Of a stretch of 43,416 nucleotides of DNA, positions 1,731 through 39,355 are shown in pieces (position 1 is the first letter of the stretch; the number at the start of each line of letters is the position of its first letter). The DNA is taken from assembly GCF_001194135.2 (NCBI RefSeq), contig NC_068983.1, positions 13,248,792 through 13,292,207 of the forward strand, written 5' to 3'. Source of the stretch: Octopus bimaculoides (taxonomy: Eukaryota). The translations under genes were made by a program, and so were the position numbers. The notes under the pieces were generated by a model, which did no database searches, was not told the DNA's origin, and saw only the letters and a program-made list of their open reading frames with translations.

Positions 1731-2480
1731 TCTGTGACCGAATATTGAGATACTGTATTATCGTTGTTGCTTCACCACAAATTAACCCAGATCCAGAAGA
1801 TATATGACCAGTTACTCCAGTCATGACAATCTTGTCTCTTCTGGTTGAGGATGACTGTATTACGAAATATTTCCTTTCTAAGACGGTAGCGGCGTAATCG
1901 GACAGCGATTCGGTTGATACTACTAGCAAGTCGAGGGACTAATTAAAGGGGCCTTATTTGCTCAATCGGCATTTGTATGAGGGGCGCGATACAAGTGTAT
2001 AATAATGTTTTTTAGGGCAGCTAAGGACTTTGTCAATTAAATTTAGTTCTCCATGACACAAGGCATCATCTTCTAATTTATAACCACTCCATTGTGAAGC
2101 AAATTTGCCTTGACCCATTGGTATTTCCTCTTCTGTTGTTAAATGAAATTCGTCTCTGTGATGGATAATATCGACTTCCTGCAGTCTCAAGAAGAGCATA
2201 TTATTAGTACTGATATAAGAGTTACAGTAAAAATGTGCAATACTTCACTGGAAATAATCTGTAGATAATTTTGAAAATTTTGCACATATTAATTTAATAA
2301 ATGTGAATATGTTATTAGTCTCGGCATCGATTCTGAACTAAAACGCGAATTAAAATATAATAAAATATATTACAGTAAGGAGGCAAAATGTAGTAATTTT
2401 CCATGCTGAAGATAGAAATCAATATATTTTGTAAATATTTCGATTTGAAATAGGAATATTAGACAATAAAAGGAAATATG

Positions 2481-2626
2481 TATTTCTTTATTGCCCACAG
2501 GTGGCTAAACATAGAGGGGACAAACAAGGACAGACAAAGGGATTAAGTAGATTACACCGACCCCAGTGTGTAACTGGTACTTATTTAATCGACCCCGAAA
2601 GGGTGAAAGTCAAAGTCGACCTCGGG
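2481..2626 (-). mobile_element. SINE family B, long-tail variant, 5'-truncated
   Basis: Near-identical to 18995-19140 and to the reverse complement of 23590-23722 (TATTTCTTTATTGCCCACAGG...GGACAAACAAGGACAGACAAAGGGATTAAG). Confidence 0.9.
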
Positions 2627-6826: not shown

Positions 6827-7319
6827 NNNNNNNNNNNNNNNNNNNNNNNNNNNNNNNNNNNNNNNNNNNNNNNNNNNNNNNNNNNNNNNNNNNNNNNNNN
6901 NNNNNNNNNNNNNNNNNNNNNNNNNNNNNNNNNNNNNNNNNNNNNNNNNNNNNNNNNNNNNNNNNNNNNNNNNNNNNNNNNNNNNNNNNNNNNNNNNNNN
7001 NNNNNNNNNNNNNNNNNNNNNNNNNNNNNNNNNNNNNNNNNNNNNNNNNNNNNNNNNNNNNNNNNNNNNNNNNNNNNNNNNNNNNNNNNNNNNNNNNNNN
7101 NNNNNNNNNNNNNNNNNNNNNNNNNNNNNNNNNNNNNNNNNNNNNNNNNNNNNNNNNNNNNNNNNNNNNNNNNNNNNNNNNNNNNNNNNNNNNNNNNNNN
7201 NNNNNNNNNNNNNNNNNNNNNNNNNNNNNNNNNNNNNNNNNNNNNNNNNNNNNNNNNNNNNNNNNNNNNNNNNNNNNNNNNNNNNNNNNNNNNNNNNNNN
7301 NNNNNNNNNNNNNNNNNNN
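6827..7319. other. Assembly gap (N run)
   Basis: Run of N. Confidence 1.
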
Positions 7320-8388: not shown

Positions 8389-9641
8389 TCAGGTCATTAA
8401 GAATGAAATGTCCGATTTTGAACTGAAAGTTTAATTTAATTCATCTCAACAAAAAGCAATGCAGTTAATCAAATTTTGCACCTAAATTATCAACACAATT
8501 TTGCCATTTTATCGGTAGATGGAGAGCAAGAGGTGATGCAAGCACGAAAGGCTGCTTTTGCATCTTCTTGATATTTGAAGATCTTCTTCGCAAAATGTTG
8601 TCTAATGTCTGGAAAACGTGATAATTGGTGCAAAGTCTGGTGAGTTTGGTGGATGACTGAGTACTTCCAAGCTCAGTTCCTGTAACTTGAGTAGCATTCT
8701 TTATACAACATGTGGTCGAGCATTGTCTTGCAAGAGGATTGGCCTGATTCTATTGATCAATCGCGGTTGTTTAGTTGCAAGTTCACTCATGATTTCATCC
8801 TACTGGTTGATGTATACATCCGCAGTAATTGAATTACCGGGTCTTATGAAGCTATATTGGATGACACCAGCGCAGGACCATCAAACAGACGCTATTAGCT
8901 TTTTTTGGTGAATGTTCTTTTTGGATTGTGTTTTGGCACTTCATCTTTATCCAACCGCCTTGCAGAACGCTTGATATTGTTGAAAAGAATGCATTTTTCA
9001 TCGCGCGTAACAATACGATACAAAAATGGTTCGCTTTTATGCCGTGACAGCAAAGAACAGCAAGTATCAAGACCACGTATCATTTGACACTCGTTCAGCT
9101 CGTGTGGTACCCAATTGTCCACCTTCTTTATTTTGCATATTTGTTTCAGATTGTCCAATACAGTTGCAACCGAAACATCAAACTTTGCTGCTAACTCACG
9201 CGTAATTTCACATATATCTGCTTCTACTACAGTTTCCAGGTCATCATTATCCACCTTGGTCTCTGGTCTACCACGGGGTTCATTTTCAAGAGTAAAGTCA
9301 CCAGACCGGAACTTCTCAAACCATCGATGTACAGTGCGCTCATTCGCCACATCTTCACCAAATACGTCCTTGATGTTTCGAGATGTCTGGGATGTATTTG
9401 TTCCGTGACGGAACTTATATTCATAACCAGCACGAAATTTTTATCCATACACGGGTTCACAAAAATTGATTTACAAGAGAAAACTAATAATATAATGAGA
9501 CACCATGAATTATACTTCAAAAAGTGTTAATGTAACTCGTCAATGTTGTAAAACAAAAAATTGCCTGGATAAAACATTAGAGTTAACGATTGTCACACTT
9601 AGTGCATAAGAAAATCAAATGTTTCATTCCTAATGACATGA
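8389..9641 (-). mobile_element. Full-length (about 1.25 kb) mariner DNA transposon, cecropia/Hsmar1-like, inactive
   Basis: Imperfect TIRs: TCAGGTCATTAAGAATGAAATGTCCGATTTT at 8389 versus reverse complement TCATGTCATTAGGAATGAAACATTTGATTTT ending at 9641. TA follows the right end (9642-9643) and CA precedes the left end. Encloses a transposase pseudogene. Confidence 0.9.
8465..9448 (-). pseudogene. Mariner transposase pseudogene (frameshifts, deletions)
   Basis: Translations give ANERTVHRWFEKFRSGDFTLENEPRGRP (HTH), WVPHEL, RIVTRDEK (first D), PILLQDNARPH (second D), HPPNSPDFAP (YSPDL-like) and C-terminal KWQNCVDNLGAKFD*. Confidence 0.92.
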
Positions 9642-27619: not shown

Positions 27620-28030
27620 ATAATTGTAAAGAATGGATAGATATTTGCACTACTTATCGACAAACTGAGAAAACATTTCGGACTCACTCAATTCCCATCG
27701 TGGTCAACTTTGTTTCATGACCGATAAAATAAAGTGTCTGTGAATTAACGGGGTTGGTGATCTCGATTAATTGCCTCCCCCTCACAATTGCCTACCTTGT
27801 GCTTAAATCAGAAAAGAAATTTGCGAAGTGGCAGAATTTTTAGCACGACAAACAAAATACTTACTGATATTTGTTTCGATTCTTTACGCTCTGAAATCAA
27901 ATCCAACCGTGGTCAATTCTGCTTTTCATACCTTCGGGGTCGATGACGTAAGTCCTAGTCAAGTACTGTGATCGATGTAATCAACTTACCCCTTTCGTCA
28001 AACTGCTGGCCTTGTGCAAAAATAAGAAAT
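27620..28030 (+). mobile_element. Two adjacent degenerate SINE B copies (about 27620-27820 and 27822-28030)
   Basis: Second copy: GTGGCAGAATTTTTAGCACG...CCTTCGGGGTCGATGACGTAAGTCC. The first copy is more decayed but shows the same motif order. Confidence 0.7.
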
Positions 28031-28037
28031 ATACATA

Positions 28038-28460
28038 TACTCTTTACTCTTTTACTCTTTTACTTGTTTCAGTCATTTGACTGCGGCCATGCTGGAGCAC
28101 CGCCTTTAGTCGAGCAAATCGACCCCAGGACTTATTCTTTGGAAGCCTAGTACTTATTCTATCGGCTTCTTTTGCCGAACCGCTAAGTGACGGGGACGTA
28201 AACACACCAGCATCGGTTGTTAAGCGATCTTGGGGGACAGACACAGACACACAAACATATACACACATATATATATATATATATATACATATATACGACA
28301 GTTTTCTTTCAGTTTCCGTCTGCCAAATCCACTCACAAGGCTTTGGTCGGCCCGAGGCTTATAGTAGAAGACACTTGCCCAAGATGTCACGCAGTGGGAA
28401 TGAACCCGGAACGATGTGGTTGGTAAGCAAGCTACTTACCACACAGCCACTTCTGTGCCT
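28038..28460 (-). mobile_element. SINE family A, full length
   Basis: Reverse complement of 33313-33750, including the (GAGTAAAA)n tail. Confidence 0.93.
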
Positions 28461-29142: not shown

Positions 29143-29206
29143 ATATATCTAAATTCATTTGCTTTTATAATTGACTTTTATTAAATTAAATTTGTTGTAA
29201 TAATTA

Positions 29207-29760
29207 GTTGTATATTATCAACTTAACGTGACAGTCTCAGTAAGGGAATCGTACTACTGCTATTTAGCCCTAGGAAGCTGGACCGCTTCCTGTCGTCCTT
29301 GACACATTTCCTGTGTCCTTATGTTTACGAGGGGGTGACAAGCACCTCCACCCAACCTAGCCTGCATTCATGGACATGTTTCTAAGTTTTTGCTGGTCAT
29401 CAGCCTGAAGTAGCATGACTAGCTGGCTGAAGATGTCTGTCAAGCTCTCGTGAACATATATTTCTAGTGAAACACATTCACTGATTACAAAAATTAGAAA
29501 TGGTTTATTTCTAAATCTCACAGGGATACTTAAGCAGCAATGTTACGATAAAGTAGTTGCATACTGTCAACTTAACGAGACAGTCCCAATAAATGATCAT
29601 ACTACTACTATTTAGCCCTAGGAAGCTGGACCGCTTCCTGTCGGCCTTGACCCATTTCCTGTGTCCTTATTCGGACTGTCACGTTAAGTTGACAGTATAC
29701 AACTACTTTATCGTAACACTGCTGCTTAAGTTTCTCTGTGAGATTTAGAAATTTCTAATT
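29207..29760 (-). mobile_element. Hammerhead-containing non-autonomous retroelement (retrozyme/Penelope pLTR-like)
   Basis: 16-bp TSD TTTGTTGTAATAATTA (29191-29206 and 29761-29776); direct repeats 29207-29322 and 29556-29670 (period 349); inverted arms 29487-29586 and 29673-29765; HHR motif at 29367-29409 on the minus strand. Confidence 0.72.
29367..29409 (-). ncRNA. Minimal type-I hammerhead ribozyme motif, predicted GUC cleavage between 29373 and 29372
   Basis: TTCAGG-CTGATGA-ccagcaaaaactta-GAAAC-AT-GTC-CATGAA. Full core, palindromic ACAUGU helix III, GUC triplet and helix I with 5 of 6 pairs; helix II is poorly paired in this copy. Confidence 0.65.
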
Positions 29761-30260
29761 TTTGTTGTAATAATTATTTTACAGTAATATCCGTACAGTG
29801 TTGAATTCTTTAAAATGCCGTTTAATTTATTTTGTGGTAGTATAGTACATTTCTTCACGTTCACATCTTTAAAACCCGTCTTGCTTTCCCTCAGGTACTT
29901 AGGTGATTCAGTATAACGAAGTGTAGTAGCCGCCACACCTCAACTAATTGATCCAATGTTTTTGTTCTGCCTCTGCTGTCCCACGTACATAAGAAGCATG
30001 GATATTTGGTGTATCCACTTTGTTCCCCACGGAAAACTTGGCCATCTTAAAGGCCACGCATATTACCCTCTGAGGACTGAGTTGGGGTTTGGGTATCTTG
30101 AAATCTAGACATGATGTTAAATAATTGTATTTACAAAAATCATGTATATTTTTAAGATAGCAATATGTGGAAGTATCAGATGAAGATCGCCCGTGTGTGC
30201 CCAGTGAGATCATAGAGCTGCTTATGGCAACCACCGCTTCAAGGCCTAGAAATAGACAAT

Positions 30261-30899: not shown

Positions 30900-31220
30900 C
30901 AGACCGGGCGTTGTGAGTGTTTATTGAGCGAAAACACCTAAAGCTCCACGAGGCTCCGGCAGAGGGATGGTGGCGAACCCTGCTGTACTCTTTCACCACA
31001 ACTTCCTCTCACTCTTACTTCCTGTTTCTGTTGTGCCTGTTATTTCAAAGGGTCAGCCTTGTCACACTGTGTCACGCTGAATATCCCCGAGAACTACGTT
31101 AAGGGTACACGTGTATGTGGAGTACTCAGACACTTGCACGTTAATTTCACGAGCAGGCTGTTCCGTTGATCGGATCAACTGGAACCCTCGACGTCGTAAG
31201 CGACGGAGTGCCAACAACAA
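30900..31220 (+). mobile_element. SINE family D, head-truncated, (CAA)n tail
   Basis: High identity to the reverse complement of 11995-12289; its first 130 bp or so are shared with 36536-36665. Confidence 0.92.
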
Positions 31221-33312
31221 ATTCTGTTGGCTAAATATCACACTTACTTTGAAGTGATTCAGTTGTTAATACAATCCGAATGAAAATATTGTTATTTTTT
31301 AAATCCTTTTTTAAAGGATGCTGATGTTTGTTTCCAAGTATGCTATAATATTTCGCATTTATTGCAAACATACCGGAACAGATACCATAGGAAACGTCTT
31401 ACGACGCTCTAATAATTCTACTTAATTCACTGTCTAGGATTTGTATTTCTTCATTGACCCTCAAGAGAATAAACTGCCAATAATGACTGCAGTACGATTT
31501 GAACCGACAACACATAGAACCGAAGCTATTAACGCTAGGTATTCAATCTGCACCTTCCCTTATTGCCTCTACTCACTCCTCTGCGCATCAGCTGTATTTA
31601 GTCAAGTATCTTTGCGTTACGACTTAAACACATGTTAAAGTCATTCGTCTTTTTCTTTCAGATTTCCGGAGTCGATAAAATAAGTACTGGCGAAAGAAAA
31701 TAAATAAATTAGGAGTTTTAATTAACGAAATGAATTTGATCAAAAGGTTTAACTAATGATAAACACTAACACTAACACAACCAAACCACCAACAGGAATA
31801 ATTTGAAACTACCATTGCAGAGTTCTTTAAAAGATTATGGTTTATTTCTAATTAAATCAGTGTTCCAAATAGTAATTTATTGCGACTGTAAAGATATAGA
31901 GAAGCACTTCTTAACAATAATAAAAGAATGCAAACTCCAATAGCTAAGAGTCTTAATTAATATTACTAAACTGAATAATCAACATCAAAACATGGATTAA
32001 AAAATAAACTATTCCAAGGAACACGAATTATACAAGGTTCCGTCGATCTAAATGGAGATTATAGAAGTAGCAAAATCGAAGAATACATGTATGCTAAAAA
32101 GAAATGAAATAATTTCTCACTCAACACTATCTTGATATAACAACACCAGCACCACCACCAACAACAACAACAACAATAATATTAATATTTTGTTTATTCA
32201 CCACCAAGCATTAATTAAAACATTGTATGAAACAGGATAAATGCGAGTAGAAATTAAAATAACAAACGCTGAAACTCAGAAAGGATGAGACATTCGAGGA
32301 AAAATACTGCCAAAAGTGATACGACTTCCAAAGTCTTCTAGTGGATACACCACGAAACTACAGTCAAACTGTCCACTAAGGCAATGCTTTCAGTTCTACT
32401 CCTCCAATCAACAGACGCGTGCTTAGAGCAGACCATGCTCACTACTTACATTCACCTTTCAATAAATTCACTAGGCTGCAGCACTTCTCTCTAAACACTC
32501 ACATTCCTTTCAACGTAAGACTTGAAATATACTGAATTAGGTACAAGTCCCTGACGTGGTACAGAAAAATACATACAAACGTGAAACCGACCGCTCACCA
32601 CGACATGAGATGAATGCATAATCGTTGAACTTACTTTTTTTCCCAGTATTGTTTATGACTGGATTTTCCAATAAGTTCCGTGAGAAATGCTGCTCTGTTA
32701 TAGAGGATTGCTGAAATCTAATGCTTCGGAAAGAACATTGAAAATTAGTATTAGTAATCGGTCTTTCTTTATACTGTGTAAAACATAATCTCATTCCCTT
32801 CACGATCCGTACTTCGTCTCGAAGTTACTTGTGTATATTGTGTGTTTTATGAGGGAATTGTTCGTCTAGTGAAGAGTGGTCATTGTTTTTTTTCGGGGAA
32901 AAGTTTGGTTTCATTTCATATGATATTGTCTGAAGTAGGAGTAACTTCTTTGTCCAGTTACACTAAATAAGTTCAATTTACTATAATTATTGAAGATTTC
33001 GAGCTTATGGTAAAAATTAGAAATACCGTAAACGACTCTATATAATTTATTATTTTTAAGTTAATCGCTACAGATTTTCTATAGAGATAACTGAAAGATA
33101 TGGCGTATCTTATACGAATACGTTTATGCAAAAAATGCGATCGAAGATAGAAGTAATAGGTAATGAGTGCATATACATGATAACGCTTAGAATATGCATA
33201 TAAACCCGTTACCTATTTTTTCTGTCTTCGAAGGCATTATTCCCATATATGTATTCGTACACGAAACGTAACTTTCAGTGCTGGCTCTGAATTCTATACA
33301 AAAACTGTACAT

Positions 33313-36476: not shown

Positions 36477-36787
36477 GGAGGCGCAATGGCGCAGTGGTTA
36501 GGACAGCAGACTCGGGGGATCGCGGTTTCGATTTCCAGACCGGGCGTTGTGTGTGTTTATTGAGTGAAGACACCTAAAGCTTCACGAGGCTCCGGCAGGG
36601 GGTAGGTGGCGACCCCTGTTGTACTCTTTCACCCCAACTTTCTCCCACTCTTTCTTCCTGTTTCTTGAGTAATGCTGCGATGGACTGGCGTCCCCGTCCA
36701 GCTGGGGGGAACATATACGCCATAGAAACCGGCAAACCGGGCCCATGAGCCTGCCAAGGCTTTAAAAGGGCGCATAAATAAATAAAA
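36477..36787 (+). mobile_element. Full-length SINE with the family-D head and body but a different tail (D2)
   Basis: A-box TGGCGCAGTGG and B-box-like GTTTCGATTTCC. The body is shared with 30900-31030; the tail is GCGATGGACTGGCGTCCCCGTCCAG...(TAAA)n. Confidence 0.88.
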
Positions 36788-39345: not shown

Positions 39346-39355
39346 NNNNNNNNNN
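39346..39355. other. Short assembly gap (10 N) inside a (TA)n/(TG)n block (about 39318-39590)
   Basis: Run of N. Confidence 1.

What the first reader, a model, noticed from the sequence alone, without database searches (positions are those of the whole stretch)
29207..29760. Retrozyme-like element: a 349-bp unit with a hammerhead, terminally redundant, inside a 16-bp TSD
Seen in sequence: the insertion is bounded by an exact 16-bp direct repeat (TTTGTTGTAATAATTA). It is built R1(29207-29322)-U-R2(29556-29670), where R1 and R2 are about 115-bp imperfect direct repeats 349 bp apart. U holds a minus-strand type-I hammerhead: CUGAUGA core, GAAAC-AU-GUC with a palindromic ACAUGU helix III, and helix I UUCAGG/CAUGAA. 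There is no ORF. Established knowledge: minimal type-I HHRs with palindromic helix III mark Penelope-like element pLTRs and metazoan non-LTR retrozymes, which make small circular RNAs of a few hundred nt and can cleave as dimers. Inference: this is about 1.3 turns of a circularly permuted 349-nt monomer, reverse-transcribed from a circular or multimeric RNA. That would be a cephalopod retrozyme family probably mobilised in trans by a Penelope RT. Helix II is damaged, so this copy may be inactive.
Basis: partly seen in the sequence, partly recalled or inferred. Interest (0 to 1): 0.85.

Follow-up and report, generated by a model that had tools for sequence, protein, structure and literature searches.

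The report
Decayed hammerhead retrozyme-like insertion
This is one old, broken copy of a small non-coding mobile element carrying a hammerhead self-cleaving RNA motif; its layout suggests it was reverse-transcribed from an RNA longer than one unit, and it belongs to a kind already known in animals.

Summary
An exact 16-bp direct repeat (29191-29206 and 29761-29776) brackets a 554-bp non-coding insert. The insert holds 1.33 head-to-tail turns of a 349-bp unit. On the minus strand, 29423-29350 carries a hammerhead-like motif with the canonical metazoan type-I layout. It is the best Rfam match in the region (HH9, 20.5 bits, E 0.037), far below the curated cut-off of 52 bits.

They are an inverted copy of 29487-29592. 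On the hammerhead strand the layout is therefore an inverted 5'-truncated copy followed by a partial tandem. That is the published arrangement of Penelope-like element insertions.

All three junctions show microhomology. Both 3' ends of the staggered break appear to have been extended on a template of the same polarity, the hammerhead strand, which is also the strand whose RNA folds best.

I read this as a decayed retrozyme-like insertion made by target-primed reverse transcription on both strands. Helix II is broken and only one ribozyme is present.

No other copy could be reached in the window or in any searchable collection. Family membership, host identity, circular RNA and the Penelope helper remain untested. 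It would be a new member of a known kind, of modest interest.

The parts
29191..29206 (.). Left copy of the 16-bp target-site duplication, TTTGTTGTAATAATTA. Its 3' end on the + strand is the inferred primer for the long cDNA.
   Evidence: Exact repeat, (D4). Rarity in the window. Loose similarity (~10 of 15) of its 3' part to the unit sequence just upstream of the start point.
29207..29245 (-). Segment a1: a partial second copy of the inner 39 nt of segment A. On the hammerhead (minus) strand this is the 3' end of the element.
   Evidence: Aligns to 29556-29592 with 5 mismatches in 37, and to the reverse complement of 29667-29703 with 4 in 37.
29246..29322 (-). Segment L1, first copy of a 77-nt segment that includes the hairpin GGAAGC-N6-GCTTCC.
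   Evidence: 95% identical to 29596-29670 (D2). 4 substitutions and 1 indel.
29323..29486 (-). Segment U, present once. It holds the hammerhead motif and most of a long imperfect hairpin that prolongs helix I.
29350..29423 (-). Hammerhead-like motif with the canonical metazoan type-I layout. Predicted cleavage is 3' of C at 29373, that is between 29373 and 29372. Helix II is broken (2 of 4 pairs), helix I pairs at 5 of 6, and helix III can only form between two copies.
   Evidence: Rfam HH9 at 20.5 bits, E 0.037, with the consensus UAC internal loop and CAAAAA loop 2 matched. Descriptor statistics. Negative control. A monomeric helix III has a forbidden 2-nt loop.
29318..29455 (-). 138-nt irregular hairpin with the hammerhead at its tip. 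It is rich in G-U pairs and therefore strand-specific.
   Evidence: Minus strand: -48.8 kcal/mol, z -3.75, 0 of 200 shuffles as good. Plus strand: z -1.98, 7 of 200.
29207..29555 (-). One complete 349-nt unit (a, L, U, outer A). 29556-29670 is the following 0.33 unit.
   Evidence: Repeat offset of 348-349. Folded as a circle, hammerhead polarity gives -102.7 against -78.3 kcal/mol for shuffles, z -4.9. The other polarity gives z -3.0. GC is 41.5%.
29487..29592 (-). Segment A, full length (106 nt), in direct orientation.
   Evidence: I1 and I9.
29593..29670 (-). Segment L2, second copy of L. On the minus strand this is the 5' end of the direct part. Its last bases, CCTTAT(T), are shared with the inverted copy.
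29667..29765 (+). Segment A': an inverted, 5'-truncated copy of A. Its last 5 nt (TTTGT) overlap the right TSD copy as microhomology.
   Evidence: 86-nt arms, 93% complementary (I1). Extension past a 7-nt indel (I9). A-L2-A' folds as a ~100-bp hairpin, -163 kcal/mol, z -25. At the two sites private to A, A' agrees with a1, so it was not copied from the present-day A.
29761..29776 (.). Right copy of the 16-bp target-site duplication. The 3' end of its minus strand is the inferred primer for the short inverted cDNA.

Best explanation
The insert at 29207-29760 is a single, old, now inert copy of a small non-coding retroelement. Its ~349-nt unit carries a canonical metazoan type-I hammerhead ribozyme, so it is a retrozyme-like element.

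Shown by the sequence:
- It sits between two copies of a 16-bp AT-rich target sequence.
- Read on the hammerhead (minus) strand, it has a ~95-100-nt inverted, 5'-truncated copy of segment A, followed by 1.33 head-to-tail units (L-A-U-L-a).
- There is short sequence overlap at the left junction, the right junction and the inversion junction.
- The three copies of the shared 37-nt segment differ from each other in a star-like way.

Inferred:
- A staggered break with 16-nt 3' overhangs was made in AT-rich DNA.
- The + strand 3' end (...AATTA) primed a 459-nt cDNA on an RNA of hammerhead polarity. That RNA was longer than one unit, so it was either a multimer or a circle copied 1.3 times round.
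- The minus-strand 3' end (...ACAAA) primed a second, ~95-100-nt cDNA on RNA of the same polarity.
- The two cDNAs were joined at the 6-7-nt overlap CCTTAT(T).

This is twin priming. It is also what a Penelope-like enzyme that cleaves and extends both strands would produce. I take a Penelope-like element as the most likely helper, by analogy only.

Since insertion each copy has drifted by about 6%. That is enough to explain the three defects in the ribozyme. With one damaged ribozyme the locus cannot release a circular RNA.
For: - TSD: exact, and one of a very few such repeats in the window.
- Unit and partial tandem.
- Inverted copy (I1 and I9).
- Junction overlaps: right TTTGT (5 nt); inversion junction CCTTAT(T) (6-7 nt); left 2 nt exact and ~10 of 15 loose.
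- Polarity argument. Extension of both TSD-proximal 3' ends requires templates of minus polarity. Independently, that is the strand with the hammerhead and the strand that folds best as RNA (unit z -4.9 against -3.0; hairpin z -3.75 against -1.98).
- Hammerhead motif. HH9 is the best match in the region, and the consensus UAC and CAAAAA loops are kept. The strict descriptor is expected 0.04 times per window. The control motif gets no hammerhead match.
- Star-like divergence. A' lacks both changes private to A. JC distance of 0.12 between R1 and R2 predicts about 4 changes in a 74-nt ribozyme. 3 defects are seen.
- Not a coding element and not a tRNA-derived SINE.
- Literature:
  - Metazoan non-LTR retrozymes have 150-450-bp units, low GC, TSDs longer than 4 bp, and structured circular RNAs; cDNAs longer than one unit are expected from circles (PMC7229834, PMC7761336).
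  - Penelope-like insertions are partial tandems, often with an inverted 5'-truncated copy at the 5' end (PMC8557442).
  - A Penelope-like protein cleaves AT-rich DNA and extends both strands from internal start points (PMC11167929).
  - Vertebrate retrozymes are related to Penelope pLTRs, and solo monomers occur (bioRxiv 10.64898/2026.07.22.740005).
Against: - Only one copy was seen. There is no second copy in the window and none in any collection reachable here.
- The hammerhead score is far below Rfam's cut-off (20.5 against 52). The hit is absent from the whole-window scans.
- Helix II, which is essential, pairs at 2 of 4 positions, and position 10.1/11.1 is C/A rather than G-C.
- The locus has one ribozyme, not the tandem ribozymes that define a working retrozyme.
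- No Penelope-like reverse transcriptase or GIY-YIG sequence was recognised among the few ORFs tested in the window, and the window was not scanned exhaustively.
- The left-junction overlap is weak.
- An RNA template cannot be told from a DNA template using one locus.
Confidence: 0.6

Rival explanations
1. The insert is a fragment of an autonomous Penelope-like element, for example a pLTR that itself contains short tandem repeats. It would then not be a separate non-autonomous retrozyme family. The insertion mechanism would be the same, but no independent 349-nt circular RNA would be implied.
For: The layout is the Penelope-like one (PMC8557442). Penelope-like insertions are often heavily 5'-truncated. 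Axolotl Penelope-like elements carry hammerhead copies in tandem (PMC7229834). Retrozymes and pLTRs are sequence relatives in Xenopus (bioRxiv 10.64898/2026.07.22.740005).
Against: The repeat period is 349 bp with no coding sequence between the repeats. The hammerhead has the canonical type-I layout typical of retrozymes, not the minimal pLTR type with a 7-8-bp helix II (PMC4209133). The whole unit folds as a compact structured RNA.
Confidence: 0.12
2. The hammerhead-like motif is a chance resemblance. The element is some other short non-coding retroposon, or a transcribed satellite unit, copied by a LINE-type enzyme with twin priming.
For: The Rfam score is far below threshold and is absent from the whole-window scans. 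Helix II is unpaired at 2 of 4 positions. A relaxed descriptor hits about 0.36 times per shuffled window. The same window has another retroposon-like insert with a 24-bp TSD, so long TSDs are common here.
Against: The strict descriptor is expected 0.04 times per window, and the motif falls inside a 554-bp insert that covers 1.3% of the window. Loops 1 and 2 match the HH9 consensus. The chance control gets no hammerhead hit. The motif is on the strand that the insertion geometry and the RNA folding independently pick out. There is no poly(A) or simple-repeat tail, as LINE-dependent elements usually have.
Confidence: 0.13
3. The insert arose at the DNA level. A piece of a 349-bp tandem satellite, for example from an extrachromosomal circle, was captured at a staggered break. 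Alternatively, local duplication and inversion by microhomology-mediated replication switching produced the structure. No RNA intermediate is involved.
For: Microhomology at all three junctions also fits template-switching repair. Circularly permuted ends are expected from DNA circles too.
Against: An exact 16-bp duplication of the target with both 3' ends extended is the signature of target-primed synthesis. There is no donor array in the window. The deduced template polarity coincides with the ribozyme strand and with the better-folding RNA strand, which a DNA mechanism does not predict.
Confidence: 0.08
4. The insert is a foldback or MITE-type DNA transposon with long terminal inverted repeats (A and A') and an internal duplication.
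For: There are ~100-nt inverted repeats around a 74-nt loop, forming a very stable hairpin (I1). There is no ORF.
Against: The inverted repeats are not terminal. The left end of the insert (GTTGTATATT...) is an internal part of A, and the two ends of the insert are unrelated. No duplication flanks the A...A' pair itself. 16 bp is long for a cut-and-paste TSD. The direct 349-bp repeat is unexplained.
Confidence: 0.05

Closest known systems
Metazoan non-LTR retrozymes (Cervera and de la Pena 2020, PMC7229834; review PMC7761336), including the older 'satellite' hammerhead repeats of newts, schistosomes and cave crickets
   Same: The unit is short and non-coding (349 bp, within the published 150-450 bp) with low GC (41%). 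The hammerhead has the type-I layout with a weak palindromic helix III that needs a dimer. The unit RNA is highly self-paired. The TSD is longer than 4 bp. More than one unit was copied per insertion, as expected from a circular or multimeric template.
   Different: Only 1.33 units and a single, damaged ribozyme are present, so the locus cannot make a circle. An inverted partial copy is attached, which the papers I read do not describe for retrozymes. Family, expression and circularity are untested. None of the papers I searched reports such elements in cephalopods, and a 2026 Octopus vulgaris repeat annotation mentions neither hammerheads nor retrozymes.
Penelope-like element insertions (pseudo-LTR partial tandems with an inverted 5'-truncated copy; PMC8557442, PMC11167929)
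   Same: The layout is identical: an inverted 5'-truncated copy at the 5' end, then a partial tandem, all within one TSD. The target is AT-rich. Start points are internal to the template. A hammerhead is present.
   Different: There is no reverse transcriptase or GIY-YIG ORF, and the unit is 349 bp rather than 3-4 kb. The hammerhead is the canonical type, not the minimal pLTR variant (PMC4209133). The published enzyme starts at sites not homologous to the target, whereas here the right junction has a 5-nt overlap.
Twin priming of LINE-1 (inversion plus truncation within one TSD; recalled from established knowledge, not read here)
   Same: Both 3' ends of the staggered break prime on the same RNA. 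The result is a 5' inverted segment joined by microhomology to a 3' direct segment, inside a 7-20-bp TSD.
   Different: There is no poly(A) tail and no L1 sequence. The template is multimeric or circular, so the direct segment exceeds one unit.
Rfam Hammerhead_HH9 (RF02275), the conserved intronic type-I hammerhead of amniotes
   Same: It is the best-scoring Rfam family. The shared features are the core, the 6-bp helix I preceded by UAC, the 4-bp helix II with a CAAAAA loop, and GAAAC...GUC.
   Different: The score is 20.5 bits against the gathering score of 52. Helix III is shorter here (2 bp, 2-nt loop) and helix II is mispaired. The context is a repeat, not a conserved intron.

Membership tests
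Hammerhead ribozyme, type I (Rfam clan CL00010) | Conserved core: CUGANGA, GAAA, and a cleavage triplet UH | tested here: met
   CUGAUGA at 29403-29397, GAAA at 29382-29379, GUC at 29375-29373.
Hammerhead ribozyme, type I (Rfam clan CL00010) | Helix II base-paired (about 4 bp in canonical metazoan motifs, usually G10.1-C11.1) | tested here: not met
   CCAG/CUUA gives only A-U and G-C. Position 10.1/11.1 is C/A. This is compatible with decay but is not shown to be decay.
Hammerhead ribozyme, type I (Rfam clan CL00010) | Helix I paired and open-ended, with loop 1 / loop 2 contact nucleotides | tested here: met
   UUCAGG/CAUGAA pairs at 5 of 6. The UAC internal loop and CAAAAA loop 2 match the HH9 consensus. 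Helix I continues into a ~130-nt hairpin.
Hammerhead ribozyme, type I (Rfam clan CL00010) | Score at or above the family's curated gathering threshold | tested here: not met
   20.5 bits against 52. No match at gathering thresholds.
Hammerhead ribozyme, type I (Rfam clan CL00010) | Self-cleavage activity | not testable with these tools
   This needs in-vitro transcription of monomer and dimer constructs.
Metazoan non-LTR retrozyme | Short (150-450 bp), non-coding, low-GC unit carrying a type-I hammerhead | tested here: met
   349-nt unit, GC 41.5%, no ORF longer than 61 aa and no homologues.
Metazoan non-LTR retrozyme | Tandem arrangement with a ribozyme in each unit (at least two ribozymes, so that a unit can be excised) | tested here: not met
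   Only 1.33 units, and segment U with the ribozyme occurs once. The locus resembles the 'solo' monomers described in bioRxiv 10.64898/2026.07.22.740005.
Metazoan non-LTR retrozyme | Multi-copy family in the genome, with a conserved ribozyme and compensatory changes | not testable with these tools
   No eukaryotic genome collection can be searched by DNA. Indirect attempts found nothing. There is no second copy in the window.
Metazoan non-LTR retrozyme | Expression as a small, highly self-paired circular RNA | tested here: inconclusive
   The predicted fold of the circular unit is unusually stable (z -4.9, 64% paired). Expression and circularity cannot be tested.
Penelope-like element (as an insertion type) | Partial tandem (pseudo-LTR) with an inverted 5'-truncated copy at the 5' end, inside a TSD | tested here: met
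   compared with the description in PMC8557442.
Penelope-like element (autonomous) | ORF with a reverse transcriptase and a GIY-YIG endonuclease | tested here: not met
   No ORF in the insert. None recognised among the selected window ORFs.
MITE / foldback DNA transposon | Inverted repeats at the two termini and a short TSD of fixed length | tested here: not met
   The termini of the insert are unrelated. The inverted repeat is internal on the left side. The TSD is 16 bp.
tRNA-derived SINE | tRNA-like head and an A-rich or simple-repeat tail | tested here: not met
   No tRNA found by ARAGORN or Rfam. No tail at either end.

The most novel reading that the evidence does not exclude
The locus would be a genomic footprint of a circular or multimeric hammerhead RNA copied 1.3 times round and primed from both strands of one staggered break. 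That would be single-locus evidence that animal retrozymes are integrated by Penelope-type both-strand target priming.
Probability: 0.35. Interest if true: 0.55.

Novelty: new member of a known kind. Interest (0 to 1): 0.35.

Why it matters
Small hammerhead-bearing repeats that make circular RNAs are known in many animals. How they are put back into DNA is still inferred rather than shown.

A copy that preserves its target duplication, a cDNA longer than one unit, an inverted second cDNA and the junction overlaps gives a concrete prediction for that step: both strands prime, on one RNA polarity, at internal sites. A genome-wide survey of the family's junctions could test that prediction.

If the host is a cephalopod, this would add an unreported repeat class to genomes whose repeat content is under active study. 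Taken alone, this copy is dead and has no evident function. At most, its ~100-bp hairpin could feed small-RNA pathways.

Tried and rejected
- Other copies in the window: blastn of the insert against the window found only self-matches.
- Copies elsewhere, via spurious ORFs. The 61-aa frame, and then a concatenate of all frames of the insert, were searched against 5.8 billion proteins with no result. The 61-aa frame against 1.84 billion representatives with full HMMER also gave nothing.
- Exact-pattern scans gave nothing. The most conserved 22-mer was scanned in metagenome, viral and prokaryote genome contigs. A hammerhead pattern with a free helix II was scanned in metagenomes.
- Identifying the source organism or an empty site:
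  - exact look-ups of two window ORFs failed;
  - a homologue search with the flanking ORF fragment at 29894-30046 found nothing;
  - there is no paralogous empty site in the window.
  The host therefore remains unverified.
- Other hammerheads in the window: none by Rfam. One relaxed-descriptor hit at 2696 was judged chance, because it lies outside the nearby repeat and has no Rfam support.
- Penelope reverse transcriptase in the window: only selected ORFs were scanned against Pfam, and only mariner domains were found. A full six-frame scan was not done.
- MITE, SINE, DIRS-like and LTR-retrozyme readings were considered and set aside:
  - the inverted repeats are not terminal;
  - there is no tRNA head or tail;
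  - a TSD is present, whereas DIRS-like elements make none (recalled from established knowledge, not checked here);
  - the hammerhead lies in the unique part, not in the terminal repeats.
Full report
**What is in the sequence**

The 16-mer TTTGTTGTAATAATTA occurs exactly at 29191-29206 and 29761-29776 (D4). I listed all exact direct repeats in the window that are 16 nt or longer, not microsatellite, and 100-1500 bp apart. Four pairs came out: this pair, the internal repeat of the insert, one other putative target duplication at 12430/12750, and one microsatellite-like pair at 28256/28742. The duplication is therefore not a chance feature of AT-rich DNA.

Between the two copies lie 554 bp with no reading frame longer than 61 codons and 41% G+C. 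No tRNA-like sequence is present.

**Architecture**

29207-29322 and 29556-29670 are 88.8% identical at an offset of 348-349 bp. However, the insert continues for about 90 bp beyond R2, and that stretch is an inverted copy.

- 29507-29592 and 29667-29752 are 93% complementary over 86 nt (I1).
- Across a 7-nt indel the match runs out to 29487 and 29765 (I9).

The full plan on the + strand is:

| Segment | Coordinates | Note |
|---|---|---|
| a1 | 29207-29245 | inner 39 nt of A |
| L1 | 29246-29322 | first copy of L |
| U | 29323-29486 | present once, holds the hammerhead |
| A | 29487-29592 | full length, direct |
| L2 | 29593-29670 | second copy of L |
| A' | 29667-29760 | inverted copy of A |

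The two ends of the insert are unrelated to each other, so it has no terminal inverted repeats. A-L2-A' would fold into a ~100-bp hairpin (-163 kcal/mol, z -25).

**The hammerhead**

On the minus strand, 29423-29350 reads GCUAGUCAUGCUACUUCAGG-CUGAUGA-CCAG-CAAAAA-CUUA-GAAA-CAUG-UC/CAUGAAUGCAGGCUAGGUUGGGU.

Rfam aligns it end to end with Hammerhead_HH9 at 20.5 bits and E 0.037 for the 1.2-kb search. This is the best hit in the region. The alignment keeps several features:

- the core;
- a 6-bp helix I, with 5 of 6 positions paired;
- the UAC internal loop 5' of helix I;
- the CAAAAA loop 2;
- GAAAC...GUC.

Helix III is two pairs around a 2-nt loop. That cannot close in one molecule, and ViennaRNA rejects it. 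It is part of the palindrome ACAUGU, which would pair between two copies.

This matches the published description of canonical metazoan type-I hammerheads: helix I 6 bp, helix II 4 bp, helix III 1-2 bp capped by a 2-4-nt palindromic loop, active as dimers (PMC4209133). It does not match the 'minimal' Penelope pLTR variant with a 7-8-bp helix II.

There are weaknesses:

- The score is far below the curated 52 bits.
- The hit does not appear in the whole-window scans.
- Helix II pairs at only 2 of 4 positions.

For scale, a descriptor that ignores helix II is expected 0.04 times (strict) or 0.36 times (relaxed) per shuffled window. The only other relaxed hit, at 2696, gets no hammerhead match in an equal-sized Rfam search.

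**RNA structure**

- Helix I continues into a 138-nt imperfect hairpin (29455-29318, minus strand). Its energy is -48.8 kcal/mol, z -3.75, and none of 200 shuffles folds as well. The complementary strand gives z -1.98.
- The 349-nt unit folded as a circle gives -102.7 kcal/mol against -78.3 for shuffles (z -4.9, 64% paired) in hammerhead polarity. The other polarity gives z -3.0.

A compact, strand-specific fold is what is described for retrozyme circular RNAs (PMC7229834, PMC7761336).

**How it was probably inserted**

Read on the hammerhead strand, the insert is an inverted, 5'-truncated copy followed by a partial tandem. [quoted passage not shown]

The junctions carry overlaps.

- Right junction: the end of A' and the target share TTTGT.
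- Inversion junction: the end of L and the reverse complement of the start of L share CCTTAT(T).
- Left junction: only TA is exact, with loose similarity (~10 of 15) further in.

The target is a 16-nt staggered break. Suppose each of its two 3' ends was extended.

- The + strand end made a1-L1-U-A-L2 (459 nt, 1.33 units).
- The minus-strand end made the ~95-100 nt of A.
- Both products are complementary to a template of minus polarity.

That polarity follows from geometry alone. It coincides with the strand that bears the hammerhead and with the strand that folds best.

A cDNA of more than one unit needs a multimeric or circular template, as the retrozyme model predicts (PMC7761336). Priming from both strands is the twin-priming scheme known from LINE-1, which I cite from established knowledge. 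It also matches the in-vitro behaviour of an Anolis Penelope-like protein. [quoted passage not shown]

The target here is AT-rich (...AATAATTA^TTTTAC, and ...CAACAAA^TTTAATT on the other strand). These steps are inferred, not shown.

**Age and decay**

In the 37 nt present three times, the copies differ pairwise at 3-5 sites. At the two sites private to A, A' agrees with a1. A' was therefore not copied from today's A, and the three copies look like products of one event.

R1 and R2 are 0.12 apart (JC), about 6% per copy. That predicts about four changes in a 74-nt ribozyme, and three defects are seen (two in helix II, one in helix I). Changing CUUA to CUGG in silico makes the minimum-energy fold adopt helices I and II of the hammerhead. 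This is only an illustration.

**What could not be done**

The decisive test is other copies and their consensus. No tool here searches eukaryotic genomes by DNA.

- The window has no second copy.
- Searches for spurious ORFs from sister copies found nothing.
- Exact-pattern scans of metagenome, viral and prokaryote contigs found nothing.
- The host could not be identified.

The window is AT-rich, rich in microsatellites, has assembly gaps, and carries mariner remnants and SINE-like repeats. That fits an invertebrate genome but proves nothing more.

If the host is an octopus, Penelope-like elements are annotated there. The 2026 O. vulgaris repeat annotation mentions neither hammerheads nor retrozymes.

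**Comparison and verdict**

The element works like, and most probably is, a decayed solo copy of a metazoan non-LTR retrozyme, integrated in the Penelope manner.

| Question | Result |
|---|---|
| Unit size, composition, ribozyme layout, TSD and fold | met |
| Tandem ribozymes at this locus | not met |
| Intact helix II | not met |
| Rfam gathering threshold | not met |
| Family, expression, activity | untestable here |

Retrozymes are established in cnidarians, molluscs (a mussel), amphibians and many other animals (PMC7229834). Their link to Penelope-like elements has been argued for vertebrates (bioRxiv 10.64898/2026.07.22.740005). This would therefore be a new member of a known kind.

The one feature worth following up is the junction anatomy. 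It makes the both-strand priming model testable on the family's other insertions.

Confidence in the main reading is 0.6 and interest is 0.35.

Noticed in passing
window 12430-12773: A 24-bp exact direct repeat (AGATAGATAGATATTATAAAGTGA, at 12430 and 12750) flanks a ~296-bp insert (12454-12749). The insert ends in a (TAGA/CAGA)n run. It looks like a SINE-type retroposon with a simple-repeat tail and a long TSD.
   Followed up: partly
window 2480-2625, 18994-19140, 23578-23722(-), 14541-14626(-), 1321-1399, 27907-27995(-), 31645-31687(-): A ~145-nt interspersed repeat family, 73-92% identical between copies, often next to microsatellites. It is unrelated to the hammerhead element.
   Followed up: partly
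window 8898-9440(-) and 15003-15272(-): Mariner/Mos1-type transposase remnants. The first hits HTH_48 at E 3.5e-14 and HTH_Tnp_IS630. The second is a weak HTH_48 hit below the cut-off.
   Followed up: partly
window 16217-16582(+): A 122-aa open frame contains '...RPDIAIWDREEKLCTVVEISCP...'. From memory this resembles the nuclease-like C-terminal region of some retroelement proteins. It has no Pfam hit.
   Followed up: partly
window 29894-30046(-): About 120 bp right of the insert there is a 51-aa frame with 'GYTKYPCFLCTWDSR', which looks like a fragment of a transposon protein. No Pfam hit and no homologue were found. The insert may sit inside an older degraded element.
   Followed up: partly
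window 12127-12304(-), 30928-31166(+), 36578-36761(+/-): Three copies of another repeat are recognisable by the shared translated strings 'GGEPCCTLSPQL' and 'VAN.AVLFHHNFLSL'. Their class is unknown.
   Followed up: no
window 6827-7319, 15436-16106, 17515-18214, 19396-19829, 39346-39355: Runs of N (2308 in all), each flanked by microsatellites. These are assembly gaps in simple-repeat tracts. Most sub-threshold Rfam 'miRNA' hits in the window are such microsatellites.
   Followed up: yes
window 29487-29765: The A-L2-A' part of the insert is a near-perfect ~100-bp hairpin with a 74-nt loop (-163 kcal/mol). It could yield double-stranded RNA or small RNAs if transcribed.
   Followed up: partly
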